NCBI GenBank assembly: GCA_002269645.1 | Contig: NIVC01001576.1 | Location: 1 to 60,743 of the forward strand | DNA: 60,743 nt | Reading direction: 5' to 3' | Source of the DNA: Macrostomum lignano | Taxonomy: Eukaryota | In this document: one piece after another, positions 1,004 through 60,743 of the stretch | Layout of the letters: every line of letters begins with the position of its first letter | Position numbering within the stretch: the stretch's first letter is position 1 | Notes under the pieces: generated by a model | What the model saw: only the letters and a program-made list of their open reading frames with translations | What the model was told of the DNA's origin: nothing | The model's database searches: none | Made by a program: the position numbers and the translations under genes

Positions 1004-2780
1004 TCAAAGGAAGCCGCCAGTCAAAGGCAGCCGTGCGGCAAGCAGCGCCGCCGTCAGCAGAGCGCCGCGCCAGGACGGCGCCAGAGCTGGCGGCGCCCGG
1101 CTCAGCACGCGATCCGGCCGGCCCAGAGCGTCAGGGGCGGCGGTCAGAAACACGGTGCGCTGAGTCTGCGACTCGCCAACCGCGACAGCGCTTTGATCTC
1201 GGCCTCGTACCAGGTACTGGCCTCCAGATCGGTGACTCGGTACTCGCTCAGGTACGGATTGTAGAACGGCGGCCGGTAGAGAATCCAGCCGCCCTTGTAG
1301 CCGGTGATGGCCCGCCTGGCCGGGTCGTAGAACACCGGCCGGACGCGGATCTCGTAGCCCACCAGGGGGTCTCCGCCGTTGACCGGCACCTTCCAGCGCA
1401 GCGTTTGGCTGTACGGGTAGGTGCTGCGGTTCGACGACAGGAAGATCACGGGATCGGGCGAGCCTCGGTCCTTGGTTCGAATCTGCAACGGTAGCTGCAT
1501 GTTGTCGGCCGTGACGCCTACAGCATTTCTGGCCCTGACCCGGATGCTGTAGTCCGTGCTGGGCATCAGGCCGTGGATTGTGATGTCGGAGTTCAGGGCG
1601 AACTGCACCGGTCCGTACCTGGATAACAGGGGGGATTCTGGCTGTTAAATTAGGAATTTGGCCAGGGAATCTCGAAAATTTGGATTTTGAATAACAAATT
1701 CTGAAAAAGGAGATTAAATTATAATTGAATATTTAGGAATTCCCAGGTCTAATTCTGGCATTCGGGAATTCCCAGGTCTAATTCTGGCATTCAGGAATTC
1801 CCAGGTCTAATTCTGGTATTTGGGAATTCCCAGGTCTAATTCTGGTATTTGGGAATTCCCAGGTCTAATTCTGGTATTTGGGAATTCCAAGTCTAATTCT
1901 GCAATTCGGGAATTCCCAGGTCTAATTCTGGCATTCAGGAATTTCCAGGTCTAATTCTGGTATTTGGGAATTCCCAGGTCTAATTCTGGTATTTGGGAAT
2001 TCCCAGGTCTAATTCTGGTATTTGGGAATTCCCAGGTCTAATTCTGGTATTTGGGAATTCCTAAGTCTAATTCTGCAATTCGGGAATTCCCAGGTCTAAT
2101 TCTGGCATTCAGGAATTCCCAGGTCTAATTCTGGTATTTGGGAATTCCCAGGTCTAATTCTGGTATTTGGGAATTCCCAGGTCTAATTCTGGTATTTGGG
2201 AATTCCCAGGTCTAATTCTGGTATTTGGGAATTCCCAAGTCTAATTCTGCAATTCGGGAATTCCCAGATCTAATTCTGGTATTTGGGATTTCCCAGGTGT
2301 AATTCTGGAATTTGGGAATTCCCAGGTCTACTTTCGACAGCAGAGATTCAAACAGCCAGACACACACCAGGGGAGGGGAGGGCGGCAACGCCAGCTTACC
2401 AAGTCAGCTGTCCGCTGAGGGCGCTGTAAGTTAGCTCATAGTACCAGAGATGCATCCCACCGTCCTCCGCTGGCGGCTGCACGTCCAGCTGGACGCTGCT
2501 GGCGGTGGTGGACACTACGGTGACCCGGGGCGGGCCTGGCACCGAGGCCTTGTAGAACATCATTTCGTGCCTGCCGCTCCCTATGCGGTTGCTGGCGTTG
2601 CAGATGTACCGGTCGAATACCCAGCGCTCGATGCCGTAGTCAGGGTACACCTTGGCGGATCGGGCGGGCGGGGCGGCGAAATTGGGGCTCGCTGAGACTC
2701 AAAAGCGGACAGAAAGAAAGCAGACTGGCAGCTTACCAGATGGCCAGACACAGACAGATAGACAGACAGACAGACAGACC

Positions 2781-2831
<51 letters not shown>

Positions 2832-5800: not shown

Positions 5801-6097
5801 GCCACGCTGATGTCGCTGCCCTTGAACGAGCAGAATATGGTGCTGGTCTTGTTAAACGGGATCCACTGCTCGGTTGGCGCGTAATTGATCTCAATGCGCT
5901 GGATGATGCGCACGTTGATATAGTCCTCGCTGACCACCTCGGGCGGGTTCACCAGCTGGTTCATGTACCTGCAGTAGTATCTGCGGGCCAAGGCGAGGCC
6001 GAAGTTGCAGGGCGAAGTGAAGGGTGGCGAGAGGAGAGAGCGGGAGGAACAGAGACAGTCATAAGATGAGGCAGGAGGGTGAAGAGTGAGTGAGATA

Positions 6098-6144
<47 letters not shown>

Positions 6145-6572
6145 AAAAATACATAGGAGACATATGAGAAATAAAAGGTACAGATGAGAGACATGGGGGG
6201 GCCAATCACGCCAGACAATGCAACGCACCTGCCCTGATCGTCATCTTTGAAGTTGTTAACGAATATCATGAGCACTCGGGGATCGCTGGTGTCCCGCTTG
6301 ATGTAGACCTGCTTATTCATGTCCTGGTTGGACACGGGGGTGTAGTAGTTTCGCGGATGGTACCAGAATAGGGTGAGGCTGGTCTCAGTGCTGACAGGCC
6401 GGCAGGACAGGGAGATGCTGCGGTCCCGGTCAACATAGATCGTATCGCCGTCGGCAGGCTTGTTCGAGATCACCACGCCGGCTGCAGACTGGGCAGGCCG
6501 CGGTGCCACCAGCAGGTGGAGAGCAGCTACCAGGGCGTGGACTGCCAATTGGCTGCTGTGGTGCAGCTTCAT
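1004..6572 (-). CDS. Fas2: Fasciclin II / NCAM-family cell adhesion molecule (signal peptide, 5 Ig, 2 FN3, hydrophobic GPI-like tail; about 808 aa after correcting two 1-bp deletions)
   Basis: Exons 6572-6229, 5980-5524, 4667-4267, 3406-3050, 2650-2400 and 1618-1004, all with GT..AG introns. Splicing creates Ig F-strand motifs (DDQG|RYYC, DQGTYVC, DDDTYIC, DSWNYTC, FDRYICNASNRIGSG) and FN3 motifs (PPAEDGG..YY, GLMPSTDYSIRVRARNAVG, W..PVNGGDPLVGY, DLEASTWYEAEIKA). The 5Ig+2FN3 layout is diagnostic of NCAM/Fas2/apCAM. One base is missing at 4290-4293 and one at 1176-1177. Confidence 0.92.
1735..2330. repeat. 29-bp minisatellite (GGGAATTCCCAGGTCTAATTCTGGTATTT), about 20 copies, Fas2 intron 5
   Basis: Direct tandem units. 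A GCAATTC variant recurs at 1901, 2075 and 2249 (174 bp = 6 units). Confidence 0.95.
2748..3008 (+). repeat. (GACA)n microsatellite, Fas2 intron 4
   Basis: Direct; source of the spurious DRQT and SVCL ORFs. Confidence 0.95.
3560..4235. repeat. Polypyrimidine/polypurine minisatellite (about 19-bp CCCTCTCTTCCCCTCCCCG), Fas2 intron 3
   Basis: Direct C/T-rich tandem units. Confidence 0.9.
4795..5505. repeat. Two related minisatellites (27-28 bp, then 32-bp GAGTGACTGACACACAGACAGTGACAATCCAG), Fas2 intron 2
   Basis: Direct tandem units sharing a CAGTGACAAT core. Confidence 0.9.
6100..6138 (+). repeat. (GA)n microsatellite, Fas2 intron 1
   Basis: Direct. Confidence 0.9.
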
Positions 6573-19458: not shown

Positions 19459-22400
19459 ATGGATCCAATGCCGGCAAATTTGCGCAACTGGCAGGATCAA
19501 CTAAACGCTGCCATTCGAGCGCACCGGGTAAGAGTTTAATAAACTTGGCTACTTTCTAGGTTTTTATCCTGTTTTTTTCTATTGTATTTTGAGCTCAGTC
19601 TATGCCGCACCGCATAAAATTTATCTGCAAAATCGCTGTCAAAATCGCCATTTCACTAAAATAAGGGAAATTAGAAGCTGATTTTATTACCTATTATTAA
19701 GTTTTCGCTTTTCCAAACACATTTTGTACTGTCACCGATTCGTTCTATTTTTGGACCAAACGAAATGAATTCTATTTTTTGTTTATTTGTTTGCCGCTTA
19801 CTTCCACCTCTCATCCTGGCCAACTCTAAACTTATTCAAAATGACGCCCCAGGTGGCTTCTTGCCCAGAATTCCGAAATGACGCAACAATCTCCATTCTC
19901 CACGCCTCAGATTCCAAAATGGCGCCCCAATCTCCATTCTCCACGCCTCAGATTCCAAAATGGCGCCCCAATCTCCATTCTCCACGCCTCAGATTCCAAA
20001 ATGGCGCCCCAATCTCCATTCTCCACGCCTCAGATTCCAAAATGGCGCCATTTTGGAATATCAGGTGTGGAGATTGGGGCGCCATTTTGGAATCTCAGGT
20101 GTGGAGATTAGGGCGCCATTTTGGAATCTCAGGTGTGGAGATTAGGGCGCCATTTTGGAATCTCAGGTGTGGAGAATGGAGATTGGGCGCCATTTGGAAT
20201 CTCAGGTGAAAGAATGGAGGGGCTCCATTCTCCACGCCTCAGATTCCAAAATGGCGCCCAATCTCCATTCTCCACAACTGAGATTCCAAAATGGCGCCCT
20301 AATCTCCAATCTCCACACCTGAGATTCCAAAATGGCGCCCCAATCTCCACACCTGAGATTCCAAAATGGCGCCCCAATCTCCACACCTGAGATTCCAAAT
20401 GGCGCCCTAATCTCCACACCTGAGATTCCAAAATGGCGCCCCAATCTCCACACCTGAGATTCCAAATGGCGCCCTAATCTCCACACCTGAGATTCCAAAA
20501 TGGCGCCCCATTCTCCACACCTGAGATTCCAAATGGCGCCCAATCTCCATTCTCCACACCTGAGATTCCAAAATGGCGCCCCAATCTCTACACCTGAGAT
20601 TCCAAAATGGCGCCCCAATCTCCATTCTCCACACCTGAGATTCCAAATGGCGCCCAATCTCCATTCTCCACACCTGAGATTCCAAAATGGCGCCTTAATC
20701 TCTACACCTGAGATTCCAAAATGGCGCCCCAATCTCCATTCTCCACACCTGAGATTCCAAAATGGCGCCCCAATCTCCATTCTCCACATCTGAGATTCCA
20801 AAATGGCGCCCCAATCTCCTCACCTGAGATTCCAAAATGGCGCCCCAATCTCCACACCTGAGATTCCAAAATGGCGCCCCAATCTCCATTCTCCACACCT
20901 GAGATTCCAAAATGGCGCCCCAATCTCCATTCTCCACATCTGAGATTCCAAAATGGCGCCCCAATCTCCTCACCTGAGATTCCAAAATGGCGCCCCAATC
21001 TCCTCACCTAATCCAGTATAAAATCCTTAAATAAACTGAGCAACTAAGCGGACCCCAAACCAATGTCATGCAGAACCTGGTGGGCCGCACCAGCCTCAGT
21101 CCGCACGACCAGAGTCTGCAGGCCAAAGTGCAGTCTGCCGAGAAGCTGATTGTGCGCATCTACCAGGCTCAGGTGAGGCCTCGCTTGGCTGGCTGTCTGG
21201 CTGACATGTTGGCTGTCCTTAATTTGCCAATCACGACTATTTCTACTGCCGCAGATAACTGCATTGCAATCTATTCCATCTACTTCTACGAGTATAGTAT
21301 ACTATTCCAGCTTACTTTCTCCGTTCTACTCTACTTGTCACCCTACTCTTCACTCTACTTTTTCATCATCTCCAATCCTCTTAAGCTACTCCCCATCTTC
21401 ACTCCTACCTTCATCCTGCCCTTGACCTCACTTCCCAGTCTACTCTTCACCCTTACTTTCTATCTTCACCTCTACTCTTCATCCTACTCTTTACCCTATT
21501 CTCCACGCTGCTCTCCACTCTATTCTCTTCATTCTAACCTTCACCCTACTTCCCAGTCTATTCTTCACCCTACTCTCTACTCTACTCATCACTCTACTCT
21601 TTACCCTACTCTCCATCTACACCTCTATCTTCACTCTACTCTCCACTCTGCTTTCGACTCTACTCTTCACTCTACTCTACTCTTCTCTCTACTCATCACT
21701 CTACTCTAATCTTCACTCTACTCTACTCTCCACTCGACTCTCCACTCTACTCTTCACTCTACTCTCCACTCTACTCTTCACTCTACTCTCCACTCTACTC
21801 TTCACTCTACTCTCCACTCTACTCTCAACTCTACTCTTCACTCTACTCTTCACTCTACTCTTCACTCTACTCTTCACTCTAACTCTTCACTCTACTCTCC
21901 ACTCTACTCTCAACTCTACTCTCCACTCTACTCTCCACTCTACTCTTCACTCTACTCTCCACTCTACTCTTCATTCTACTCTTCACCTTACTCGATCGCA
22001 CGCTCCACCTGTAAACAAAGCTGATGACCATTCCGCAGAAGCCGCTGCTGGAGCAGTACAAGAAGGAATGTGAACGGAAACGCGCAGCCTTGAAAGCGAC
22101 CCACGGGCATCGCGTCATCAAGGTAGCAGCGCTGCGCACATTCTGCAATGACAAAAAAATCAGAACATTGAAACAGCTTTTCAAACCGAAATTAACTCCC
22201 TCATTCGAGCAGGACCAGGCAAAGTCGCTTGACGAAGTGTTGGACGACGGGGTGCGACATCACTTCTGCCCGTCAACTCTTGAACGACTTGGCAACAGCG
22301 TTGGGAGCCTCAGCCCGGAGAAGAAAAGGGTGAGTCTGCACTGAACTTGCTCAGCTACCGGATTTTCTACTCCAAAACTACCCGATTTTCTTTTCTAAAA

Positions 22401-37854: not shown

Positions 37855-38344
<490 letters not shown>

Positions 38345-38379
38345 AAGGCAGGCAGAGCCGGTGCAGTGCAGGTCGGAGC

Positions 38380-38548
38380 CAGAGGAGGTCGGAGCCAGAG
38401 GAGGTCGGAGCCAGAGGAGACCGCAGCCAGAGGAGACCGCAGCCAGAGGAGACCGCAGCCAGAGGAGACCGCAGCCAGAGGAGACCGCAGCCAGAGGAGA
38501 CCGCAGCCAGAGGAGACCGCAGCCAGAGGAGACCGCAGCCAGAGGAGA
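38380..38548 (+). repeat. 16-bp repeat (CCAGAGGAGACCGCAG)
   Basis: Direct, about 10 units. Confidence 0.9.
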
Positions 38549-39124
38549 CATTCATCAATTGCAAATTCCTCTGTCGTTTCCCCAGCCCGAGACCCCCCTC
38601 CCGCAGCCAGTTATACAAAGTTTGTTTTCTTCTCCCAGCTTCCCAATCGGCGGAATTGGCGCGGATGAGGCGGAGCGGGGGGGCGGGGACGCGGAAGTGC
38701 CGTGGAGTGTAAAAATCCAATTTGGTGGCCGAGCAGCCCAGGCACGCGTAATTGAATCCGTGACACCTGATTTGCATAGCAATGGGGCCCGCGCAGATTC
38801 CCGGCCTGTTTACAGGCAGTGTTAAACACTTCCATTATCCCTTCTCTTCCGTCTCGCTTGCCCTTCCCCCCCCCCTATCGCACTCCCCTCCTCAATCACT
38901 TGCAACTCGCCAATCCATTTTATTAATCTCGTCAGACCGACTCAGACTTGCCACTTTCTCTCTCTCTCTCTCTCTCTCTCCTTCCTTTCACTCTGCCGAG
39001 CTCTCAGATCCCAAAGTCTTGCCCGCTTGCCTACTCAGCTCCGGCCCGGAGGGCCTCGGGCTGCTGAAACCCCCACTGAGCTCCCTTCAAATCGACATCT
39101 GATTAAAACTGGCCATGCAGCGAC

Positions 39125-40290: not shown

Positions 40291-40788
40291 CTCTCCCTGC
40301 AGCGGCCTCTCCATCCCTCCATCTCCTTCTTGTTCAAGTTGTTCGAGCCCGAGCCCCCTGTAGTCCAGAGCCCATTCTCGCAGCTCATCATTGATGACAA
40401 TTGAAAAGTTCAGAAGAATGACAGCCAGATGGGCAAAGCATCGAGTTTTAATCAGTAATGCTGCTACTCTAAGCAATTTTATTGAATTTTTTCAATCCTT
40501 TTTGTCAATAAGGACTAATAAAAATCATACATAAGTGATTCAAAAGAGATCATTTGCTCAAACAACAATATAAAAAAAGATTACGGTATGCAGTCTAAAG
40601 GAGTGGAATTACAGCAGGGCAGTTGACAAGCAGTGAGTTGTAAATGTTTGTAAGCAGTGTACATGCCTACCGACTCAACAGGTGCAGGCTTCATGGCACT
40701 GAGACTTCCTTTGTATCGCTTCATCTCAATCGAATATTCCAGCTTCATCAGTACTCGCGCCTGAAATATATTGAATTAAGGATTGAGT

Positions 40789-41062
40789 TCTCAATGACTC
40801 CAAACTGATTCTCAATGACTCCAAACTGATTCTCAATGACTCCAAACTGATTCTCAATGACTCCAAACTGATTCTCAATGACTCCAAACTGATTCTCAAT
40901 GACTCCAAACTGATTCTCAATGACTCCAAACTGATTCTCAATGACTCCAAACTGATTCTCAATGACTCCAAACTGATTCTCAATGACTCCAAACTGATTC
41001 TCAATGACTCCAAACTGATTCTCAATGACTCCAAACTGATTCTCAATGACTCCAAACTGATT
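40789..41062. repeat. Perfect 21-bp repeat x13 (TCTCAATGACTCCAAACTGAT) just 3' of the Irx stop
   Basis: Direct; no variants seen. Confidence 0.95.
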
Positions 41063-41181
41063 CTTTTGGCTCCGCCTTGTAAATGTGATGCCTGTAGGAA
41101 AGTGACCCCGCGTTGTTGGGTCAAAGCCTGCAGCCTCTCTGGTTCCCCTATCAGATCTGCTTCCCAGCGTCCCACCGCACC

Positions 41182-42816
41182 TCATCTCCCTGATCCGGAA
41201 GCTGGCAGGTGCTGCGCCGCCGGCCCGGACGCCATCTCCGACGTCAGCAGCGGCGGCGGGAACCCGGCGGCGGCGGCGGCAGCGGCGGCAGCGGCAAAGG
41301 CGGCGGTGGACGAAGCCGGCGGGAAAGGCGGGAACTGCAGGCCGAGAGGCGGATGCGGCGGCGGCGGGAACAGCGGCAGGTAGTGCGGCGGCGGCTGTGG
41401 CAGCGGCTGCGGCAGCGGCGAAGGCGGCAACAGCGGGTGGTGCCCAGCTGGTCCGCTGATTTTCGCAGCCGAGGCGGCGCTGGTCGCAGCTGCAGCAGCG
41501 GCCATCGCAGCGGCAGACTGCTGGGACAGCAGCCCCGCTAGAGGGTGCGCCAGTGGGAAAGGAAACAGGCTGTGATGGAATGGCTGCTGCTGTTGCTGCT
41601 TCTGTTGCTGCTGCTGCGGCAACTGCAACTGCGGCGGCAGCGGCGGCGGCAGACTTACTAACGGTGGAAAAATCGGCGGTGGCTGCTTCCGCAACATGTG
41701 CTGCTGCTGCTGTTGCTGCTGGTGGTTGTCGCTGATGGTGTCCACCAGGGACCAGATTCGCGGCTTCTTCGCCGCCGACGCAGCAGCCGTCGCTCCCGGC
41801 CGCTTTCCTGTCGCGTCGCCGTCGCCTTCGCCGACTCCACCGCTGTCATCACCGCCTTCCGCTTCGACATCCCCAGCTGCCGCCGCCTCTTCGTTATCCA
41901 GCTCGTCGTCGTCATCGTCAAGATCGTCGACATCGTCGTCCAGATCACCGGCCAGCAGATCGCGCTCGCCCGAGGCTGCCCCGCCGGCAGCGCCAGCCTC
42001 TTCAGCGAGTCGCTTCTCCTCCTCGGAGCGGTTGCGGGGGCTCCACGTCATCTTGTTCTCCTTCTTGAGTCGACGCCGAGCGTTGGCAAACCAGGTTGAC
42101 ACCTGCGAGGATGGAGACGATCCCAGCTGAGCTGATTGATCGAGTTCAGGATTGTCCTAGAATGGGGCGCTGCCTGTCCGGACTGCCTTTGGGGGGACTG
42201 TCCTGGGGGAATGTCTTTGAGGAAGACACTGTCTTTGGGTTGCTGTCTTTTTGGAGGCTGTCTTCAAGCGGAAACTGTACTTGAGGAAATCAAAGCCGGT
42301 GCTCATCGCTCACCTGAGTTAGGGTCATCTTGGTGATGATGGCCAGCATGATCTTCTCCCCCTTGGACGGGTAGGGGTTCCGCTTGTGCTCCTGCAGCCA
42401 GGCCTTGAGCAGGGCCGTGGTCTCTCTGGTGGCGTTCTTCCGTCTCGGCCCGTCCAACCCGATGCCGCTGTTGTACACAGCCAGCAGGTGCGGGTCCAGG
42501 TTGTAGGCGAAGGCCGCCTGCTGCAGCTGCCGCCAGCTCTCCGCCGGACTGGCCGCGTCACCGCCGTCGCCGCCTTCAGCGGCCGCTTCGAACAGCCCCT
42601 GCGGCAGAGGCGGTGGCGGCGGCGGTGGAAGCCACGGCGAGTCGGCGCTTGAAGCTGCGGACTGGATAGGGCAGAGAGAGACGTGTCGGTATTGATTCTG
42701 CCTTCTGCCTGTGCCTGTCTGTCTGCCTGTGCCAGCGAGTCTGTCTGTGTCTCTCTGTCTGCCTTCTGCCTGTGCCTGTCTGTCTGCCTGTCTGTCTGTC
42801 TGTCTGTCTGTCTGCC

Positions 42817-47417: not shown

Positions 47418-48345
47418 TCACGGACCCGTGGCAACAATATCCAAGTACACGGTGCACTCGCTCCCGTATTGGCAGTGGCGGACTAGGAACTCCGTACTTG
47501 GACCGGAAGCTGTGGCAGAAGCTCCAGTTGGTGGGCAGCCGAGCTCTACCAGTTCCTGCTCGTGCTGAGACTGAGCGGCAATTGCAGAGTAAGGTTTTAT
47601 GTAAAAGTGCATAAAAACTAGAAAAGGAAAAAATGAAGTGGCTCACTCCACTCTCTCGGGTGGCGGCTGCCGTTGCTGTCACCGGGCTGTAGGCCAAAAC
47701 GCGATGCTTCATCAGCTAAAAGTACGAAAAAAATCGGTTGTTTTCAAAGCCATCAATCAGTTTAGAAAGCGGAGAGATTGGCAGCCAGCGAAGATACCAA
47801 ATTTTAGGCAGTTTCAAGCGCTAACCATTGCTGCCAGAAGCAGACCAACGCATATGGCAATGGTGGCCGATGCTGCCACCAGCACTGTCGGCATGGAGGT
47901 CTGAGCTTTGTTTGAGCTTCTGCAGTCCAGCTCTGCTGTGGCTGAGCGCACCCACTGGAGCCCGGCTCCCGGTGGCCGCTGCACCGCGCTGCACTCGAGC
48001 TTGGCTTCCTGCATCGATCCCGGTCTCTGCTCCTCATCAATGTTGAACTGCCACGAGCTGACAGAGCCGTTTTCGCTTGAGTTCTGCAAAAACCCAGCCA
48101 GTCGGGTCACTTCTGTCGCATCAACCGACAATGTACCGGTAGAGAGACTCACCAGAGACAGAAGGGTCAGGTTGTGGGCTCCGAATCCACTTGTATCAAA
48201 TGAAATTTTACACCAATGCTGAGGCTTCGGCTGAGAGTCGGATGATGTGAATTGTACAGTCACATTTGACAGGTCACTACAGCTGGCAGCGTGCAGCAGT
48301 GGGGTTGACACGATCGGGCTGAGCCAGATCCAAGTTCGATGCTTT
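47418..48345 (-). CDS. C-terminal part of an unidentified single-pass type I membrane glycoprotein; 5' end lost in the 34-bp array
   Basis: Exons ~48345-47826, 47715-47647 and 47570(or 47564)-47418; all junctions GT..AG, phase 0. The ectodomain fragment has Cys residues and NVT/NLT/NSS/NGS sequons. The TM segment VLVAASATIAICVGLLLAAM|LM is followed by basic KHR, and the tail ends ...YGSECTVYLDIVATGP*. Confidence 0.65.
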
Positions 48346-51300
48346 AATCGGGCTGAGCCAGATCCAAGTTCGATGCTTTAATCGGGCTGAGCCAGATCCA
48401 AGTTCGATGCTTTAATCGGGCTGAGCCAGATCCAAGTTCGATGCTTTAATCGGGCTGAGCCAGATCCAAGTTCGATGCTTTAATCGGGCTGAGCCAGATC
48501 CAAGTTCGATGCTTTAATCGGGCTGAGCCAGATCCAAGTTCGATGCTTTAATCGGGCTGAGCCAGATCCAAGTTCGATGCTTTAATCGGGCTGAGCCAGA
48601 TCCAAGTTCGATGCTTTAATCGGGCTGAGCCAGATCCAAGTTCGATGCTTTAATCGGGCTGAGCCAGATCCAAGTTCGATGCTTTAATCGGGCTGAGCCA
48701 GATCCAAGTTCGATGCTTTAATCGGGCTGAGCCAGATCCAAGTTCGATGCTTTAATCGGGCTGAGCCAGATCCAAGTTCGATGCTTTAATCGGGCTGAGC
48801 CAGATCCAAGTTCGATGCTTTAATCGGGCTGAGCCAGATCCAAGTTCGATGCTTTAATCGGGCTGAGCCAGATCCAAGTTCGATGCTTTAATCGGGCTGA
48901 GCCAGATCCAAGTTCGATGCTTTAATCGGGCTGAGCCAGATCCAAGTTCGATGCTTTAATCGGGCTGAGCCAGATCCAAGTTCGATGCTTTAATCGGGCT
49001 GAGCCAGATCCAAGTTCGATGCTTTAATCGGGCTGAGCCAGATCCAAGTTCGATGCTTTAATCGGGCTGAGCCAGATCCAAGTTCGATGCTTTAATCGGG
49101 CTGAGCCAGATCCAAGTTCGATGCTTTAATCGGGCTGAGCCAGATCCAAGTTCGATGCTTTAATCGGGCTGAGCCAGATCCAAGTTCGATGCTTTAATCG
49201 GGCTGAGCCAGATCCAAGTTCGATGCTTTAATCGGGCTGAGCCAGATCCAAGTTCGATGCTTTAATCGGGCTGAGCCAGATCCAAGTTCGATGCTTTAAT
49301 CGGGCTGAGCCAGATCCAAGTTCGATGCTTTAATCGGGCTGAGCCAGATCCAAGTTCGATGCTTTAATCGGGCTGAGCCAGATCCAAGTTCGATGCTTTA
49401 ATCGGGCTGAGCCAGATCCAAGTTCGATGCTTTAATCGGGCTGAGCCAGATCCAAGTTCGATGCTTTAATCGGGCTGAGCCAGATCCAAGTTCGATGCTT
49501 TAATCGGGCTGAGCCAGATCCAAGTTCGATGCTTTAATCGGGCTGAGCCAGATCCAAGTTCGATGCTTTAATCGGGCTGAGCCAGATCCAAGTTCGATGC
49601 TTTAATCGGGCTGAGCCAGATCCAAGTTCGATGCTTTAATCGGGCTGAGCCAGATCCAAGTTCGATGCTTTAATCGGGCTGAGCCAGATCCAAGTTCGAT
49701 GCTTTAATCGGGCTGAGCCAGATCCAAGTTCGATGCTTTAATCGGGCTGAGCCAGATCCAAGTTCGATGCTTTAATCGGGCTGAGCCAGATCCAAGTTCG
49801 ATGCTTTAATCGGGCTGAGCCAGATCCAAGTTCGATGCTTTAATCGGGCTGAGCCAGATCCAAGTTCGATGCTTTAATCGGGCTGAGCCAGATCCAAGTT
49901 CGATGCTTTAATCGGGCTGAGCCAGATCCAAGTTCGATGCTTTAATCGGGCTGAGCCAGATCCAAGTTCGATGCTTTAATCGGGCTGAGCCAGATCCAAG
50001 TTCGATGCTTTAATCGGGCTGAGCCAGATCCAAGTTCGATGCTTTAATCGGGCTGAGCCAGATCCAAGTTCGATGCTTTAATCGGGCTGAGCCAGATCCA
50101 AGTTCGATGCTTTAATCGGGCTGAGCCAGATCCAAGTTCGATGCTTTAATCGGGCTGAGCCAGATCCAAGTTCGATGCTTTAATCGGGCTGAGCCAGATC
50201 CAAGTTCGATGCTTTAATCGGGCTGAGCCAGATCCAAGTTCGATGCTTTAATCGGGCTGAGCCAGATCCAAGTTCGATGCTTTAATCGGGCTGAGCCAGA
50301 TCCAAGTTCGATGCTTTAATCGGGCTGAGCCAGATCCAAGTTCGATGCTTTAATCGGGCTGAGCCAGATCCAAGTTCGATGCTTTAATCGGGCTGAGCCA
50401 GATCCAAGTTCGATGCTTTAATCGGGCTGAGCCAGATCCAAGTTCGATGCTTTAATCGGGCTGAGCCAGATCCAAGTTCGATGCTTTAATCGGGCTGAGC
50501 CAGATCCAAGTTCGATGCTTTAATCGGGCTGAGCCAGATCCAAGTTCGATGCTTTAATCGGGCTGAGCCAGATCCAAGTTCGATGCTTTAATCGGGCTGA
50601 GCCAGATCCAAGTTCGATGCTTTAATCGGGCTGAGCCAGATCCAAGTTCGATGCTTTAATCGGGCTGAGCCAGATCCAAGTTCGATGCTTTAATCGGGCT
50701 GAGCCAGATCCAAGTTCGATGCTTTAATCGGGCTGAGCCAGATCCAAGTTCGATGCTTTAATCGGGCTGAGCCAGATCCAAGTTCGATGCTTTAATCGGG
50801 CTGAGCCAGATCCAAGTTCGATGCTTTAATCGGGCTGAGCCAGATCCAAGTTCGATGCTTTAATCGGGCTGAGCCAGATCCAAGTTCGATGCTTTAATCG
50901 GGCTGAGCCAGATCCAAGTTCGATGCTTTAATCGGGCTGAGCCAGATCCAAGTTCGATGCTTTAATCGGGCTGAGCCAGATCCAAGTTCGATGCTTTAAT
51001 CGGGCTGAGCCAGATCCAAGTTCGATGCTTTAATCGGGCTGAGCCAGATCCAAGTTCGATGCTTTAATCGGGCTGAGCCAGATCCAAGTTCGATGCTTTA
51101 ATCGGGCTGAGCCAGATCCAAGTTCGATGCTTTAATCGGGCTGAGCCAGATCCAAGTTCGATGCTTTAATCGGGCTGAGCCAGATCCAAGTTCGATGCTT
51201 TAATCGGGCTGAGCCAGATCCAAGTTCGATGCTTTAATCGGGCTGAGCCAGATCCAAGTTCGATGCTTTAATCGGGCTGAGCCAGATCCAAGTTCGATGC

Positions 51301-54300
51301 TTTAATCGGGCTGAGCCAGATCCAAGTTCGATGCTTTAATCGGGCTGAGCCAGATCCAAGTTCGATGCTTTAATCGGGCTGAGCCAGATCCAAGTTCGAT
51401 GCTTTAATCGGGCTGAGCCAGATCCAAGTTCGATGCTTTAATCGGGCTGAGCCAGATCCAAGTTCGATGCTTTAATCGGGCTGAGCCAGATCCAAGTTCG
51501 ATGCTTTAATCGGGCTGAGCCAGATCCAAGTTCGATGCTTTAATCGGGCTGAGCCAGATCCAAGTTCGATGCTTTAATCGGGCTGAGCCAGATCCAAGTT
51601 CGATGCTTTAATCGGGCTGAGCCAGATCCAAGTTCGATGCTTTAATCGGGCTGAGCCAGATCCAAGTTCGATGCTTTAATCGGGCTGAGCCAGATCCAAG
51701 TTCGATGCTTTAATCGGGCTGAGCCAGATCCAAGTTCGATGCTTTAATCGGGCTGAGCCAGATCCAAGTTCGATGCTTTAATCGGGCTGAGCCAGATCCA
51801 AGTTCGATGCTTTAATCGGGCTGAGCCAGATCCAAGTTCGATGCTTTAATCGGGCTGAGCCAGATCCAAGTTCGATGCTTTAATCGGGCTGAGCCAGATC
51901 CAAGTTCGATGCTTTAATCGGGCTGAGCCAGATCCAAGTTCGATGCTTTAATCGGGCTGAGCCAGATCCAAGTTCGATGCTTTAATCGGGCTGAGCCAGA
52001 TCCAAGTTCGATGCTTTAATCGGGCTGAGCCAGATCCAAGTTCGATGCTTTAATCGGGCTGAGCCAGATCCAAGTTCGATGCTTTAATCGGGCTGAGCCA
52101 GATCCAAGTTCGATGCTTTAATCGGGCTGAGCCAGATCCAAGTTCGATGCTTTAATCGGGCTGAGCCAGATCCAAGTTCGATGCTTTAATCGGGCTGAGC
52201 CAGATCCAAGTTCGATGCTTTAATCGGGCTGAGCCAGATCCAAGTTCGATGCTTTAATCGGGCTGAGCCAGATCCAAGTTCGATGCTTTAATCGGGCTGA
52301 GCCAGATCCAAGTTCGATGCTTTAATCGGGCTGAGCCAGATCCAAGTTCGATGCTTTAATCGGGCTGAGCCAGATCCAAGTTCGATGCTTTAATCGGGCT
52401 GAGCCAGATCCAAGTTCGATGCTTTAATCGGGCTGAGCCAGATCCAAGTTCGATGCTTTAATCGGGCTGAGCCAGATCCAAGTTCGATGCTTTAATCGGG
52501 CTGAGCCAGATCCAAGTTCGATGCTTTAATCGGGCTGAGCCAGATCCAAGTTCGATGCTTTAATCGGGCTGAGCCAGATCCAAGTTCGATGCTTTAATCG
52601 GGCTGAGCCAGATCCAAGTTCGATGCTTTAATCGGGCTGAGCCAGATCCAAGTTCGATGCTTTAATCGGGCTGAGCCAGATCCAAGTTCGATGCTTTAAT
52701 CGGGCTGAGCCAGATCCAAGTTCGATGCTTTAATCGGGCTGAGCCAGATCCAAGTTCGATGCTTTAATCGGGCTGAGCCAGATCCAAGTTCGATGCTTTA
52801 ATCGGGCTGAGCCAGATCCAAGTTCGATGCTTTAATCGGGCTGAGCCAGATCCAAGTTCGATGCTTTAATCGGGCTGAGCCAGATCCAAGTTCGATGCTT
52901 TAATCGGGCTGAGCCAGATCCAAGTTCGATGCTTTAATCGGGCTGAGCCAGATCCAAGTTCGATGCTTTAATCGGGCTGAGCCAGATCCAAGTTCGATGC
53001 TTTAATCGGGCTGAGCCAGATCCAAGTTCGATGCTTTAATCGGGCTGAGCCAGATCCAAGTTCGATGCTTTAATCGGGCTGAGCCAGATCCAAGTTCGAT
53101 GCTTTAATCGGGCTGAGCCAGATCCAAGTTCGATGCTTTAATCGGGCTGAGCCAGATCCAAGTTCGATGCTTTAATCGGGCTGAGCCAGATCCAAGTTCG
53201 ATGCTTTAATCGGGCTGAGCCAGATCCAAGTTCGATGCTTTAATCGGGCTGAGCCAGATCCAAGTTCGATGCTTTAATCGGGCTGAGCCAGATCCAAGTT
53301 CGATGCTTTAATCGGGCTGAGCCAGATCCAAGTTCGATGCTTTAATCGGGCTGAGCCAGATCCAAGTTCGATGCTTTAATCGGGCTGAGCCAGATCCAAG
53401 TTCGATGCTTTAATCGGGCTGAGCCAGATCCAAGTTCGATGCTTTAATCGGGCTGAGCCAGATCCAAGTTCGATGCTTTAATCGGGCTGAGCCAGATCCA
53501 AGTTCGATGCTTTAATCGGGCTGAGCCAGATCCAAGTTCGATGCTTTAATCGGGCTGAGCCAGATCCAAGTTCGATGCTTTAATCGGGCTGAGCCAGATC
53601 CAAGTTCGATGCTTTAATCGGGCTGAGCCAGATCCAAGTTCGATGCTTTAATCGGGCTGAGCCAGATCCAAGTTCGATGCTTTAATCGGGCTGAGCCAGA
53701 TCCAAGTTCGATGCTTTAATCGGGCTGAGCCAGATCCAAGTTCGATGCTTTAATCGGGCTGAGCCAGATCCAAGTTCGATGCTTTAATCGGGCTGAGCCA
53801 GATCCAAGTTCGATGCTTTAATCGGGCTGAGCCAGATCCAAGTTCGATGCTTTAATCGGGCTGAGCCAGATCCAAGTTCGATGCTTTAATCGGGCTGAGC
53901 CAGATCCAAGTTCGATGCTTTAATCGGGCTGAGCCAGATCCAAGTTCGATGCTTTAATCGGGCTGAGCCAGATCCAAGTTCGATGCTTTAATCGGGCTGA
54001 GCCAGATCCAAGTTCGATGCTTTAATCGGGCTGAGCCAGATCCAAGTTCGATGCTTTAATCGGGCTGAGCCAGATCCAAGTTCGATGCTTTAATCGGGCT
54101 GAGCCAGATCCAAGTTCGATGCTTTAATCGGGCTGAGCCAGATCCAAGTTCGATGCTTTAATCGGGCTGAGCCAGATCCAAGTTCGATGCTTTAATCGGG
54201 CTGAGCCAGATCCAAGTTCGATGCTTTAATCGGGCTGAGCCAGATCCAAGTTCGATGCTTTAATCGGGCTGAGCCAGATCCAAGTTCGATGCTTTAATCG

Positions 54301-57300
54301 GGCTGAGCCAGATCCAAGTTCGATGCTTTAATCGGGCTGAGCCAGATCCAAGTTCGATGCTTTAATCGGGCTGAGCCAGATCCAAGTTCGATGCTTTAAT
54401 CGGGCTGAGCCAGATCCAAGTTCGATGCTTTAATCGGGCTGAGCCAGATCCAAGTTCGATGCTTTAATCGGGCTGAGCCAGATCCAAGTTCGATGCTTTA
54501 ATCGGGCTGAGCCAGATCCAAGTTCGATGCTTTAATCGGGCTGAGCCAGATCCAAGTTCGATGCTTTAATCGGGCTGAGCCAGATCCAAGTTCGATGCTT
54601 TAATCGGGCTGAGCCAGATCCAAGTTCGATGCTTTAATCGGGCTGAGCCAGATCCAAGTTCGATGCTTTAATCGGGCTGAGCCAGATCCAAGTTCGATGC
54701 TTTAATCGGGCTGAGCCAGATCCAAGTTCGATGCTTTAATCGGGCTGAGCCAGATCCAAGTTCGATGCTTTAATCGGGCTGAGCCAGATCCAAGTTCGAT
54801 GCTTTAATCGGGCTGAGCCAGATCCAAGTTCGATGCTTTAATCGGGCTGAGCCAGATCCAAGTTCGATGCTTTAATCGGGCTGAGCCAGATCCAAGTTCG
54901 ATGCTTTAATCGGGCTGAGCCAGATCCAAGTTCGATGCTTTAATCGGGCTGAGCCAGATCCAAGTTCGATGCTTTAATCGGGCTGAGCCAGATCCAAGTT
55001 CGATGCTTTAATCGGGCTGAGCCAGATCCAAGTTCGATGCTTTAATCGGGCTGAGCCAGATCCAAGTTCGATGCTTTAATCGGGCTGAGCCAGATCCAAG
55101 TTCGATGCTTTAATCGGGCTGAGCCAGATCCAAGTTCGATGCTTTAATCGGGCTGAGCCAGATCCAAGTTCGATGCTTTAATCGGGCTGAGCCAGATCCA
55201 AGTTCGATGCTTTAATCGGGCTGAGCCAGATCCAAGTTCGATGCTTTAATCGGGCTGAGCCAGATCCAAGTTCGATGCTTTAATCGGGCTGAGCCAGATC
55301 CAAGTTCGATGCTTTAATCGGGCTGAGCCAGATCCAAGTTCGATGCTTTAATCGGGCTGAGCCAGATCCAAGTTCGATGCTTTAATCGGGCTGAGCCAGA
55401 TCCAAGTTCGATGCTTTAATCGGGCTGAGCCAGATCCAAGTTCGATGCTTTAATCGGGCTGAGCCAGATCCAAGTTCGATGCTTTAATCGGGCTGAGCCA
55501 GATCCAAGTTCGATGCTTTAATCGGGCTGAGCCAGATCCAAGTTCGATGCTTTAATCGGGCTGAGCCAGATCCAAGTTCGATGCTTTAATCGGGCTGAGC
55601 CAGATCCAAGTTCGATGCTTTAATCGGGCTGAGCCAGATCCAAGTTCGATGCTTTAATCGGGCTGAGCCAGATCCAAGTTCGATGCTTTAATCGGGCTGA
55701 GCCAGATCCAAGTTCGATGCTTTAATCGGGCTGAGCCAGATCCAAGTTCGATGCTTTAATCGGGCTGAGCCAGATCCAAGTTCGATGCTTTAATCGGGCT
55801 GAGCCAGATCCAAGTTCGATGCTTTAATCGGGCTGAGCCAGATCCAAGTTCGATGCTTTAATCGGGCTGAGCCAGATCCAAGTTCGATGCTTTAATCGGG
55901 CTGAGCCAGATCCAAGTTCGATGCTTTAATCGGGCTGAGCCAGATCCAAGTTCGATGCTTTAATCGGGCTGAGCCAGATCCAAGTTCGATGCTTTAATCG
56001 GGCTGAGCCAGATCCAAGTTCGATGCTTTAATCGGGCTGAGCCAGATCCAAGTTCGATGCTTTAATCGGGCTGAGCCAGATCCAAGTTCGATGCTTTAAT
56101 CGGGCTGAGCCAGATCCAAGTTCGATGCTTTAATCGGGCTGAGCCAGATCCAAGTTCGATGCTTTAATCGGGCTGAGCCAGATCCAAGTTCGATGCTTTA
56201 ATCGGGCTGAGCCAGATCCAAGTTCGATGCTTTAATCGGGCTGAGCCAGATCCAAGTTCGATGCTTTAATCGGGCTGAGCCAGATCCAAGTTCGATGCTT
56301 TAATCGGGCTGAGCCAGATCCAAGTTCGATGCTTTAATCGGGCTGAGCCAGATCCAAGTTCGATGCTTTAATCGGGCTGAGCCAGATCCAAGTTCGATGC
56401 TTTAATCGGGCTGAGCCAGATCCAAGTTCGATGCTTTAATCGGGCTGAGCCAGATCCAAGTTCGATGCTTTAATCGGGCTGAGCCAGATCCAAGTTCGAT
56501 GCTTTAATCGGGCTGAGCCAGATCCAAGTTCGATGCTTTAATCGGGCTGAGCCAGATCCAAGTTCGATGCTTTAATCGGGCTGAGCCAGATCCAAGTTCG
56601 ATGCTTTAATCGGGCTGAGCCAGATCCAAGTTCGATGCTTTAATCGGGCTGAGCCAGATCCAAGTTCGATGCTTTAATCGGGCTGAGCCAGATCCAAGTT
56701 CGATGCTTTAATCGGGCTGAGCCAGATCCAAGTTCGATGCTTTAATCGGGCTGAGCCAGATCCAAGTTCGATGCTTTAATCGGGCTGAGCCAGATCCAAG
56801 TTCGATGCTTTAATCGGGCTGAGCCAGATCCAAGTTCGATGCTTTAATCGGGCTGAGCCAGATCCAAGTTCGATGCTTTAATCGGGCTGAGCCAGATCCA
56901 AGTTCGATGCTTTAATCGGGCTGAGCCAGATCCAAGTTCGATGCTTTAATCGGGCTGAGCCAGATCCAAGTTCGATGCTTTAATCGGGCTGAGCCAGATC
57001 CAAGTTCGATGCTTTAATCGGGCTGAGCCAGATCCAAGTTCGATGCTTTAATCGGGCTGAGCCAGATCCAAGTTCGATGCTTTAATCGGGCTGAGCCAGA
57101 TCCAAGTTCGATGCTTTAATCGGGCTGAGCCAGATCCAAGTTCGATGCTTTAATCGGGCTGAGCCAGATCCAAGTTCGATGCTTTAATCGGGCTGAGCCA
57201 GATCCAAGTTCGATGCTTTAATCGGGCTGAGCCAGATCCAAGTTCGATGCTTTAATCGGGCTGAGCCAGATCCAAGTTCGATGCTTTAATCGGGCTGAGC

Positions 57301-60300
57301 CAGATCCAAGTTCGATGCTTTAATCGGGCTGAGCCAGATCCAAGTTCGATGCTTTAATCGGGCTGAGCCAGATCCAAGTTCGATGCTTTAATCGGGCTGA
57401 GCCAGATCCAAGTTCGATGCTTTAATCGGGCTGAGCCAGATCCAAGTTCGATGCTTTAATCGGGCTGAGCCAGATCCAAGTTCGATGCTTTAATCGGGCT
57501 GAGCCAGATCCAAGTTCGATGCTTTAATCGGGCTGAGCCAGATCCAAGTTCGATGCTTTAATCGGGCTGAGCCAGATCCAAGTTCGATGCTTTAATCGGG
57601 CTGAGCCAGATCCAAGTTCGATGCTTTAATCGGGCTGAGCCAGATCCAAGTTCGATGCTTTAATCGGGCTGAGCCAGATCCAAGTTCGATGCTTTAATCG
57701 GGCTGAGCCAGATCCAAGTTCGATGCTTTAATCGGGCTGAGCCAGATCCAAGTTCGATGCTTTAATCGGGCTGAGCCAGATCCAAGTTCGATGCTTTAAT
57801 CGGGCTGAGCCAGATCCAAGTTCGATGCTTTAATCGGGCTGAGCCAGATCCAAGTTCGATGCTTTAATCGGGCTGAGCCAGATCCAAGTTCGATGCTTTA
57901 ATCGGGCTGAGCCAGATCCAAGTTCGATGCTTTAATCGGGCTGAGCCAGATCCAAGTTCGATGCTTTAATCGGGCTGAGCCAGATCCAAGTTCGATGCTT
58001 TAATCGGGCTGAGCCAGATCCAAGTTCGATGCTTTAATCGGGCTGAGCCAGATCCAAGTTCGATGCTTTAATCGGGCTGAGCCAGATCCAAGTTCGATGC
58101 TTTAATCGGGCTGAGCCAGATCCAAGTTCGATGCTTTAATCGGGCTGAGCCAGATCCAAGTTCGATGCTTTAATCGGGCTGAGCCAGATCCAAGTTCGAT
58201 GCTTTAATCGGGCTGAGCCAGATCCAAGTTCGATGCTTTAATCGGGCTGAGCCAGATCCAAGTTCGATGCTTTAATCGGGCTGAGCCAGATCCAAGTTCG
58301 ATGCTTTAATCGGGCTGAGCCAGATCCAAGTTCGATGCTTTAATCGGGCTGAGCCAGATCCAAGTTCGATGCTTTAATCGGGCTGAGCCAGATCCAAGTT
58401 CGATGCTTTAATCGGGCTGAGCCAGATCCAAGTTCGATGCTTTAATCGGGCTGAGCCAGATCCAAGTTCGATGCTTTAATCGGGCTGAGCCAGATCCAAG
58501 TTCGATGCTTTAATCGGGCTGAGCCAGATCCAAGTTCGATGCTTTAATCGGGCTGAGCCAGATCCAAGTTCGATGCTTTAATCGGGCTGAGCCAGATCCA
58601 AGTTCGATGCTTTAATCGGGCTGAGCCAGATCCAAGTTCGATGCTTTAATCGGGCTGAGCCAGATCCAAGTTCGATGCTTTAATCGGGCTGAGCCAGATC
58701 CAAGTTCGATGCTTTAATCGGGCTGAGCCAGATCCAAGTTCGATGCTTTAATCGGGCTGAGCCAGATCCAAGTTCGATGCTTTAATCGGGCTGAGCCAGA
58801 TCCAAGTTCGATGCTTTAATCGGGCTGAGCCAGATCCAAGTTCGATGCTTTAATCGGGCTGAGCCAGATCCAAGTTCGATGCTTTAATCGGGCTGAGCCA
58901 GATCCAAGTTCGATGCTTTAATCGGGCTGAGCCAGATCCAAGTTCGATGCTTTAATCGGGCTGAGCCAGATCCAAGTTCGATGCTTTAATCGGGCTGAGC
59001 CAGATCCAAGTTCGATGCTTTAATCGGGCTGAGCCAGATCCAAGTTCGATGCTTTAATCGGGCTGAGCCAGATCCAAGTTCGATGCTTTAATCGGGCTGA
59101 GCCAGATCCAAGTTCGATGCTTTAATCGGGCTGAGCCAGATCCAAGTTCGATGCTTTAATCGGGCTGAGCCAGATCCAAGTTCGATGCTTTAATCGGGCT
59201 GAGCCAGATCCAAGTTCGATGCTTTAATCGGGCTGAGCCAGATCCAAGTTCGATGCTTTAATCGGGCTGAGCCAGATCCAAGTTCGATGCTTTAATCGGG
59301 CTGAGCCAGATCCAAGTTCGATGCTTTAATCGGGCTGAGCCAGATCCAAGTTCGATGCTTTAATCGGGCTGAGCCAGATCCAAGTTCGATGCTTTAATCG
59401 GGCTGAGCCAGATCCAAGTTCGATGCTTTAATCGGCTGAGCCAGATCCAAGTTCGATGCTTTAATCGGGCTGAGCCAGATCCAAGTTCGATGCTTTAATC
59501 GGCTGAGCCAGATCCAAGTTCGATGCTTTAATCGGGCTGAGCCAGATCCAAGTTCGATGCTTTAATCGGGCTGAGCCAGATCCAAGTTCGATGCTTTAAT
59601 CGGGCTGAGCCAGATCCAAGTTCGATGCTTTAATCGGGCTGAGCCAGATCCAAGTTCGATGCTTTAATCGGGCTGAGCCAGATCCAAGTTCGATGCTTTA
59701 ATCGGGCTGAGCCAGATCCAAGTTCGATGCTTTAATCGGGCTGAGCCAGATCCAAGTTCGATGCTTTAATCGGGCTGAGCCAGATCCAAGTTCGATGCTT
59801 TAATCGGGCTGAGCCAGATCCAAGTTCGATGCTTTAATCGGGCTGAGCCAGATCCAAGTTCGATGCTTTAATCGGGCTGAGCCAGATCCAAGTTCGATGC
59901 TTTAATCGGGCTGAGCCAGATCCAAGTTCGATGCTTTAATCGGGCTGAGCCAGATCCAAGTTCGATGCTTTAATCGGGCTGAGCCAGATCCAAGTTCGAT
60001 GCTTTAATCGGGCTGAGCCAGATCCAAGTTCGATGCTTTAATCGGGCTGAGCCAGATCCAAGTTCGATGCTTTAATCGGCTGAGCCAGATCAAGTTCGAT
60101 GCTTTAATCGGGCTGAGCCAGATCCAAGTTCGATGCTTTAATCGGGCTGAGCCAGATCCAAGTTCGATGCTTTAATCGGGCTGAGCCAGATCCAAGTTCG
60201 ATGCTTTAATCGGGCTGAGCCAGATCCAAGTTCGATGCTTTAATCGGGCTGAGCCAGATCCAAGTTCGATGCTTTAATCGGGCTGAGCCAGATCAAGTTC

Positions 60301-60743
60301 GATGCTTTAATCGGGCTGAGCCAGATCCAAGTTCGATGCTTTAATCGGGCTGAGCCAGATCCAAGTTCGATGCTTTAATCGGGCTGAGCCAGATCCAAGT
60401 TCGATGCTTTAATCGGGCTGAGCCAGATCCAAGTTCGATGCTTTAATCGGGCTGAGCCAGATCCAAGTTCGATGCTTTAATCGGGCTGAGCCAGATCCAA
60501 GTTCGATGCTTTAATCGGGCTGAGCCAGATCCAAGTTCGATGCTTTAATCGGGCTGAGCCAGATCCAAGTTCGATGCTTTAATCGGGCTGAGCCAGATCC
60601 AAGTTCGATGCTTTAATCGGGCTGAGCCAGATCCAAGTTCGATGCTTTAATCGGGCTGAGCCAGATCCAAGTTCGATGCTTTAATCGGCTGAGCCAGATC
60701 AAGTTCGATGCTTTAATCGGGCTGAGCCAGATCCAAGTTCGAT
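48313..60743. repeat. 34-bp tandem satellite (ATCGGGCTGAGCCAGATCCAAGTTCGATGCTTTA), about 365 copies, continuing past the window end
   Basis: Exact 34-bp period (60-base lines repeat every 1020 bp up to about 59400). The only variants seen are 1-bp deletions in the GGG/CC runs in the last 1.3 kb. Confidence 0.99.

What the first reader, a model, noticed from the sequence alone, without database searches (positions are those of the whole stretch)
48313..60743. More than 12.4 kb of a virtually invariant 34-bp repeat
About 365 copies show no substitution that I could find. The only variants are 1-bp homopolymer deletions after about 59430, which look like falling consensus quality. Every other long array in this window is visibly heterogeneous, so this one is either extremely recent (rolling-circle or re-replication type amplification), strongly homogenised (satellite or centromere-like), or an artefact of collapse, polishing or library concatemers. 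The high-complexity unit is unlike the neighbouring low-complexity minisatellites and matches no adapter I recognise.
Basis: partly seen in the sequence, partly recalled or inferred. Interest (0 to 1): 0.8.

Follow-up and report, generated by a model that had tools for sequence, protein, structure and literature searches.

The report
Long uniform 34-bp satellite array
The last 12.4 kb of this flatworm-like genomic window is a real, non-coding, head-to-tail array of one 34-bp unit that starts next to a gene exon and runs off the end of the sequence; it is most likely an ordinary young satellite that the assembler could not cross, not a new kind of element.

Summary
From 48313 to the window end there are 360 exact copies of ATCGGGCTGAGCCAGATCCAAGTTCGATGCTTTA, 5 copies with only 1-bp homopolymer deletions, and a partial last copy. 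There are no substitutions, and the first 11,084 bp are perfect. All 7 deletions lie in the last 1,313 bp, as expected if coverage falls towards a contig end.

The window is metazoan. Two independent genes, an Iroquois homeobox gene and the exon that abuts the array, have their best or only relatives in the flatworm Macrostomum lignano. In that genome tandem repeats make up about 15% of the DNA and fragment assemblies.

The unit is non-coding. It matches no Rfam family, no other repeat in the window, no flank sequence, no searched collection and no paper.

The best reading is a young or strongly homogenised satellite-scale minisatellite. It sits in an intron or upstream region of a minus-strand Ig-like membrane-protein gene, and its true length exceeds what is assembled. 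The perfect identity may be partly inflated by consensus calling.

Telomere, centromere and adapter readings each fail at least one test. The unit is new but the kind is known, so interest is low to moderate.

The parts
48313..59396 (.). Perfect core of the array: 326 identical 34-bp units (ATCGGGCTGAGCCAGATCCAAGTTCGATGCTTTA), with no substitution or indel
   Evidence: only 34 distinct 34-mers, lag-34 identity 1.0
59397..60743 (.). Distal part of the same array. It has 5 units with 7 one-base homopolymer deletions (GGG->GG x4, GATCC->GATC x3) among perfect units, and ends in a 26-nt partial unit at the window end
   Evidence: clustering P about 1.5e-7; 0.53% deletions per bp; no substitutions
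48311..48314 (.). Abrupt flank/array junction (...GTTGACACG|ATCGGGCTGAG...). There are no degenerate edge units, and the first unit is already perfect
47814..48311 (-). 165-codon open frame that abuts the array. It is homologous to the membrane-proximal domain plus transmembrane helix (residues ~225-356 of ~400) of Macrostomum lignano 'Ig-like domain-containing' proteins. The N-terminal exons are not in the window, so they lie beyond the array or are missing
   Evidence: tblastn E 1e-9 to 4e-11; conserved Cys, VTVQFTSS.SQP and CSAVQ..P.G motifs

Best explanation
This is a genuine, non-coding, satellite-scale minisatellite. A 34-bp unit with no detectable progenitor in the window was amplified head to tail to more than 12.4 kb. 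It sits at the 5' side (intron or upstream region) of a minus-strand, flatworm-specific Ig-like membrane-protein gene. The surrounding genome makes minisatellites unusually readily.

Inferred mechanism: a de novo duplication, then expansion by replication slippage and unequal sister-chromatid exchange or gene conversion. Either the expansion was very recent, or turnover is fast enough to outrun point mutation, which gives near-identical units.

The assembler could extend into the array only as far as reads anchored in the unique flank reach. That explains three things: the sequence stops inside the array, the last ~1.3 kb carries low-coverage homopolymer deletion errors, and the real array is longer than shown.

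No function is needed to explain it. The most likely effect is a very large repetitive intron or upstream spacer.

Shown: the array anatomy, its non-coding nature, the gene context, the taxon affinity and the error clustering. Inferred: the expansion mechanism, the contig-end explanation and the true length.
For: - The array and its perfection.
- Non-coding: stops in all six frames. No Rfam family at the gathering or E<=1 thresholds and no tRNA.
- Genome context: 36% of the upstream 48.3 kb is tandem repeat, with 12 arrays of 500 bp or more, each with its own unrelated unit. These arrays begin 19-35 nt from canonical splice donors of an Ig/FN3 gene, so an array touching an exon is normal here.
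- Another young, 100%-identical array exists at 40788-41064, so recent array birth does occur in this genome.
- Taxon: the Iroquois exons are 77% identical to two M. lignano proteins, including residues outside the homeodomain. The abutting exon has eukaryotic relatives only in M. lignano.
- M. lignano has about 15% simple and tandem repeats, and these are blamed for its fragmented assemblies (PMC5730564).
- All 7 variants are 1-bp homopolymer deletions in the final 1,313 bp (P about 1.5e-7), as expected when anchored-read coverage tapers.
- CpG o/e is 0.94 in the unit against 0.68 in the flank, which fits a young sequence.
- With zero substitutions in 11,084 bp, the units would share an ancestor less than about 2.7e4-2.7e5 generations ago (mu 1e-8 to 1e-9), if the consensus is faithful.
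Against: - No raw reads, depth or whole assembly were available. Multi-read support for the junction, the copy number and the true unit variation are therefore untested.
- Perfect identity over 11 kb is unusual even for young satellites. It could be partly produced by read correction or polishing inside an unspanned array.
- The first unit next to unique DNA is already perfect, whereas old arrays usually have degenerate edges.
- The deletions fall in only 2 of the 7 homopolymer runs (P about 0.003), and they co-occur in the same unit more often than independence predicts (P about 0.023). Some of them could therefore be real variant units rather than errors.
- The unit was found nowhere else, so there is no independent confirmation that it exists in nature.
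Confidence: 0.58

Rival explanations
1. The array is real, but its 'invariance' and length are products of assembly. Reads lying wholly inside the array have no anchor. Read correction and polishing then average over registers and erase scattered unit variants. The 12.4 kb simply reflects read length, and the true array may be ordinarily heterogeneous (1-3% divergence).
For: - The array runs to the last base of the window, and quality decays only at the far end.
- Every array that reads could span (2.3 kb or less) keeps its heterogeneity. The one unspannable array is the one that looks perfect.
- Assemblies of the closest known genome are reported to be limited by tandem repeats (PMC5730564).
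Against: - Reads anchored in the flank fix the register for the proximal kilobases. Real variants there should survive consensus, as they do in the other arrays, yet the very first units are perfect.
- A short array (40788-41064) that reads certainly span is also 100% identical. Truly perfect arrays therefore exist in this genome.
Confidence: 0.25
2. The array is an in-vitro or chimeric artefact. A rolling-circle or ligation concatemer of a 34-nt oligonucleotide-like sequence was joined to genomic DNA in one chimeric read and kept as a contig tip.
For: - The identity is perfect, the unit is compositionally balanced (8/9/8/9 bases, entropy 2.0 bits), and the junction is abrupt.
- The unit occurs nowhere else in the window or in any collection searched.
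- The error-bearing tail would fit single-read support.
Against: - There is no match to plasmids or phages, nor to any adapter I can recall. The adapter check rests on memory only and is not a test.
- The error-free 11 kb followed by an error-bearing 1.3 kb suggests several reads cover the proximal part.
- The junction falls 2-35 nt from an exon boundary. Natural arrays in this window start at that distance from splice sites, but a random chimeric breakpoint would land there only about 1% of the time. That figure is my own estimate, not a tool result.
- Assemblers normally trim single-read tips when the true path continues.
Confidence: 0.07
3. The array is a chromosome-end structure: either a subtelomeric satellite lying just inside a canonical telomere, or a non-canonical telomeric repeat copied from a long template.
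For: - The array reaches the end of the sequence.
- Units synthesised from a template are the classic case of invariant repeats.
- The upstream region is very dense in minisatellites (36%), as many subtelomeres are.
Against: - Flatworm telomeres are canonical. (TTAGGG)n FISH signals lie at all chromosome ends in M. lignano and Macrostomum sp. 8 (PMC5068713). AACCCT is found at chromosome ends in Luticola (PMC13238120).
- There is no TTAGGG-type run anywhere in the window.
- The outward strand is not G-rich (GC skew about 0.06).
- At 34 bp, the unit is longer than any telomerase repeat I know of. The longest I recall are about 25-26 bp in budding yeasts (memory only).
- Dense minisatellites are reported genome-wide in this group, not only near chromosome ends.
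Confidence: 0.06
4. The array is a centromeric or pericentromeric satellite.
For: It is a long, homogeneous array, and centromere cores are the most homogenised satellites known.
Against: - A probable coding exon lies within 2-35 nt, and a conserved developmental gene (Iroquois) lies 6 kb away.
- The unit is far shorter than the usual nucleosome-scale centromeric monomers (general knowledge).
- Cytology found no strongly repeat-enriched chromosome regions in M. lignano (PMC5068713).
Confidence: 0.03

Closest known systems
Species-specific satellite DNA and large intronic or intergenic minisatellites, such as the abundant simple and tandem repeats reported for Macrostomum lignano (PMC5730564)
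   Same: It is a head-to-tail, non-coding array with a short unit (10-100 bp). It reaches satellite-scale length, breaks the assembly, and lies in a genome whose closest known relative is rich in such arrays.
   Different: The unit sequence is undescribed. The array is at least 5.5x longer than any other in the window. It shows no substitutions at all, where the other arrays show 2-19% lag divergence.
Telomerase-templated long telomeric repeats of budding yeasts (23-25 bp units in Candida and Kluyveromyces; from memory)
   Same: The unit is high-complexity and essentially invariant, and it is repeated to the end of the sequence.
   Different: The unit is longer (34 bp) and not G-rich. The host is a metazoan from a clade with canonical TTAGGG telomeres. 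Terminal location is unproven.
Recently expanded, highly homogenised centromere-core satellite layers seen in telomere-to-telomere assemblies (general knowledge)
   Same: Neighbouring units have near-100% identity, which implies very recent expansion or rapid turnover.
   Different: The unit is much shorter, genes lie immediately adjacent, and there is no higher-order periodicity. The variant units are spaced 2, 17, 6 and 12 units apart.

Membership tests
Satellite / minisatellite DNA | Head-to-tail tandem repetition of one unit | tested here: met
   365.8 copies, period 34; 355 of 359 intervals between successive exact units are exactly 34 bp
Satellite / minisatellite DNA | Non-coding, not a structured-RNA gene array | tested here: met
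   Stops in all six frames; no Rfam match at gathering or E<=1; no tRNA
Satellite / minisatellite DNA | High genomic copy number, confirmed independently of the assembly | not testable with these tools
   No reads or whole assembly were available; the unit is absent from all searchable collections
Telomerase-synthesised telomere repeat | Matches the clade's telomere motif (TTAGGG in flatworms) | tested here: not met
   No run of three or more tandem TTAGGG-type motifs anywhere in the window; flatworm telomeres are TTAGGG/AACCCT
Telomerase-synthesised telomere repeat | G-rich strand running 5'->3' towards the end | tested here: not met
   Unit composition is A8 T9 C8 G9; GC skew about 0.06
Telomerase-synthesised telomere repeat | Located at the physical chromosome terminus, at all ends | not testable with these tools
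   The array reaches the window end, but the chromosome position is unknown
Centromeric satellite | Gene-poor surroundings and association with centromeric chromatin | tested here: not met
   An exon lies 2-35 nt from the array and an Iroquois gene 6 kb away. CENP-A association is not testable here
Sequencing adapter / vector / contaminant concatemer | Sequence identity to a known synthetic, plasmid, phage or prokaryotic sequence | tested here: not met
   No hit in plasmids or phages, or in viral, metagenome or prokaryotic genome contigs. Adapter lists were checked from memory only
Sequencing adapter / vector / contaminant concatemer | Not contiguous with genuine host sequence in independent reads | not testable with these tools
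   In the assembly it is contiguous with a genuine exon; read-level support is unknown

The most novel reading that the evidence does not exclude
The units are truly identical in single molecules, and the array was made in one step by a templated or rolling-circle-type process. Candidates are re-integration of an amplified extrachromosomal circle, break-induced replication, or healing of a broken chromosome end by a non-canonical repeat. The array would then mark a new chromosome end or a very recent structural event next to the Ig-like gene in a macrostomid flatworm.
Probability: 0.05. Interest if true: 0.6.

Novelty: new member of a known kind. Interest (0 to 1): 0.25.

Why it matters
If it is real, this is a clean example of how fast a flatworm genome can build a multi-kilobase array from a unique 34-bp seed right beside a gene. 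It is also a concrete locus where these assemblies break. The unit would make a good single-oligo FISH or qPCR marker, and a useful test case for measuring array turnover between individuals or laboratory lines. It does not point to a new class of element. Its main practical value is as a flag for an unresolved assembly end and a probably split gene model.

Tried and rejected
- Coding repeat: rejected, because there are stops in every frame.
- Structured RNA or tRNA-derived array: rejected.
- Unit derived from the flank or from another minisatellite in the window: rejected. The best local alignments are no better than those of shuffled units.
- Unit-wide dyad symmetry: not significant, 20/34, P=0.11. 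Only a local 17-bp imperfect palindrome, ATCgGGCTgAGCCaGAT, is present. The single-strand fold is marginal (z -2.3 and -1.2).
- Literature search for the unit in any rotation and on either strand: only unrelated complementary primer pairs turned up. A search for a 34-bp flatworm satellite found nothing.
- Exact scans of viral, metagenome and prokaryotic genome contigs with the 34-mer, and of the metagenome and genome contigs with a 22-mer junction core: nothing.
- Plasmid and phage BLAST: nothing.
- Word-indexed homology searches with the abutting ORF and with an FN3 exon: nothing. Only the exhaustive HMMER search recovered the M. lignano relatives.
- tblastn extended one alignment 16 residues into the array ('GSARLKHRTWIWLSPI' against 'GSVEKRTTVAVLYPPL', 5/16 identical). 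I treat this as chance.
- The species itself could not be determined. The window is not M. lignano as represented in the database: identity is 77% for the Iroquois protein and about 31-36% for the Ig-like family.
Full report
**Observation.** Tandem Repeats Finder reports a single array from 48313 to the last base of the window (60743): period 34, 365.8 copies, 99% matches. Walking the array unit by unit gives 360 exact copies of ATCGGGCTGAGCCAGATCCAAGTTCGATGCTTTA, five variant units and a 26-nt partial final unit. There is not one substitution. The first 326 units (11,084 bp) are perfect, and that stretch contains only the 34 possible 34-mers.

The variants are seven single-base deletions. Four are GGG->GG and three are GATCC->GATC. 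They lie in units starting at 59431, 59498, 60075, 60277 and 60684. All seven fall in the final 1,313 bp, which has a probability of about 1.5e-7 if they were placed uniformly.
- One other array is also 100% identical, though short (40788-41064, 21 bp x 13.2).
- Many neighbouring units are not low-complexity.
- 12.4 kb is a lower bound, because the array runs off the window.

**What surrounds it.** The window is metazoan.
- Minus-strand exons at 1.1-6.6 kb carry Ig and FN3 domains.
- Two exons at 42541-42308 and 42108-41182 encode an Iroquois-class homeodomain protein.
- The best two database hits for the Iroquois protein, by a clear margin, are Macrostomum lignano proteins. Identity is 77% and extends outside the homeodomain.
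- The 165-codon open frame that touches the array (48311-47814, minus strand) had no word-indexed relative. An exhaustive HMMER scan then found relatives, and the eukaryotic ones are all M. lignano 'Ig-like domain-containing' proteins.
- That alignment covers their membrane-proximal domain and transmembrane helix (residues ~225-356 of ~400), with conserved cysteines and motifs.

So two independent genes place the window in a flatworm related to Macrostomum, though not M. lignano as held in the database. The array's flank is a probable real exon. The N-terminal 225 residues of that gene family are not encoded anywhere in the 48 kb to the left. The array therefore occupies the intron or upstream region of this minus-strand gene, with the missing exons beyond it, or else the gene copy is truncated.

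**The array fits the local genome style, at an extreme.** Upstream of the array, 36% of the sequence is tandem repeat. There are 12 arrays of 500 bp or more, and the longest is 2,257 bp. Each has its own unit. None is related to the 34-mer, and the 34-mer has no progenitor in the flank. In the Ig/FN3 gene, the two intron arrays whose junctions I read begin 19-35 nt after canonical splice donors. An array starting 2-35 nt from an exon is therefore normal in this window.

For M. lignano, the literature reports about 15% simple and tandem repeats and blames them for fragmented assemblies (PMC5730564). A rhabdocoel flatworm has 16.5% tandem repeats (PMC13238120).

**What it is not.**
- Not coding: there are stops in all six frames.
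- Not a known RNA family or tRNA array.
- Not detectably a contaminant or vector. There are no hits in plasmid or phage collections, or in viral, metagenomic or prokaryotic contigs, with the full unit; a junction-spanning 22-mer also found nothing in the metagenomic and prokaryotic contigs. The unit is in no searchable paper.
- Not a canonical telomere. There is no TTAGGG-type run in the window. The outward strand is not G-rich. Flatworm chromosome ends carry TTAGGG (PMC5068713; PMC13238120).
- Not centromere-like, because genes are immediately adjacent.
- Not strongly symmetric. Unit-wide dyad symmetry is not significant, and single-strand folding is marginal.

**Most likely explanation.** This is a genuine, young or rapidly homogenised satellite-scale minisatellite that the assembler could not traverse. 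Reads anchored in the unique flank fix the sequence for about 11 kb. As fewer and fewer reads reach further, the consensus degrades into homopolymer deletions, and the sequence ends where the longest anchored read ends. This single account explains the clean-then-noisy pattern, the absence of substitutions among the 'variants', and the termination inside the array.

If the consensus is faithful, zero substitutions in 11,084 bp means all units share an ancestor within roughly 2.7e4-2.7e5 generations, for mutation rates of 1e-8 to 1e-9. The alternative is that unequal exchange or conversion outpaces mutation. CpG observed/expected is 0.94 in the unit against 0.68 in the flank, which also fits youth. 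The expansion mechanism (slippage plus unequal sister-chromatid exchange) is inferred from general knowledge of satellites. It is not shown here.

**Caveats and rivals.** The main rival (about 0.25) is that the array is real but its perfection is inflated by read correction and polishing in an unspannable repeat. Only arrays that reads could span show heterogeneity. Against this, the short, certainly spanned 21-mer array is also perfect.

A chimeric or in-vitro concatemer (about 0.07) cannot be excluded without reads. It is disfavoured by the position of the junction at an exon boundary and by the long error-free proximal part.

Subtelomeric or non-canonical telomeric (about 0.06) and centromeric (about 0.03) readings each fail tested features.

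Two oddities remain. The deletions hit only two of the seven homopolymer runs (P about 0.003), and they co-occur in the same unit more than expected (P about 0.023). This could reflect context-specific sequencing error or a few real variant units.

**Verdict.** This is a new unit of a known kind (satellite or large minisatellite) in a flatworm-type genome already known for such repeats. Interest is low to moderate. Its main value is as a marker of an unresolved assembly end and a split gene model, and as a convenient locus for studying array turnover.

Noticed in passing
window 41182-42541 (-): The last two exons of an Iroquois-class (TALE) homeobox gene. The homeodomain is split by an intron after ...KMTLTQ|[12 protein letters not shown]. 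There is an IRO-box-like [10 protein letters not shown] motif and long poly-Q/poly-A tracts. The best hits are two Macrostomum lignano proteins (77% identity, including non-homeodomain residues).
   Followed up: partly
window 1144-6572 (-): A multi-exon Ig/FN3 (DSCAM-like FN3) cell-adhesion gene. Each of four successive introns is dominated by a different minisatellite (29-mer, ACAG, 19-mer, 28/32-mer). At the two junctions I read, the array begins 19-35 nt from a canonical splice donor.
   Followed up: partly
window 40788-41064: A second perfectly homogeneous array (21 bp x 13.2, 100% identity). It lies 118 nt downstream of the Iroquois stop codon, so probably in the 3' UTR. It shows that truly perfect young arrays exist in this genome.
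   Followed up: partly
window 19870-21009: A 34/41-bp minisatellite (core ATTCCAAAATGGCGCC) arranged in blocks of alternating orientation (+, -, +). The tandem arrays therefore form inverted repeats of one another. It has the same 34-bp period as the finding, but the unit is unrelated (P=0.6).
   Followed up: partly
window 1-48312: 36% of the sequence is tandem repeat, with 12 arrays of 500 bp or more and unrelated units. The window also begins inside a (GACA)n run, so both ends sit in tandem repeats. That would fit the window being a whole contig broken at repeats.
   Followed up: partly
window 37856-38344: A very pure (ATAG)122 microsatellite (98% matches), immediately followed by a 16-bp x 10.8 array with 98% matches (38377-38549).
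   Followed up: no
window 48312-48359 (-): tblastn extended the alignment to an M. lignano homologue 16 residues into the array (GSARLKHRTWIWLSPI against GSVEKRTTVAVLYPPL, 5/16 identical). The array unit also supplies a possible CTCAG| splice acceptor just upstream of the exon. This is probably chance, but it could hint that the unit was seeded from the original intron/exon junction.
   Followed up: no
window 59431-60743: The seven deletions affect only the GGG run and the CC of GATCC, never TTT, AA, TT or the other CC (P about 0.003). Two units carry both deletions (P about 0.023). This suggests context-specific sequencing error, or a few real variant units.
   Followed up: partly
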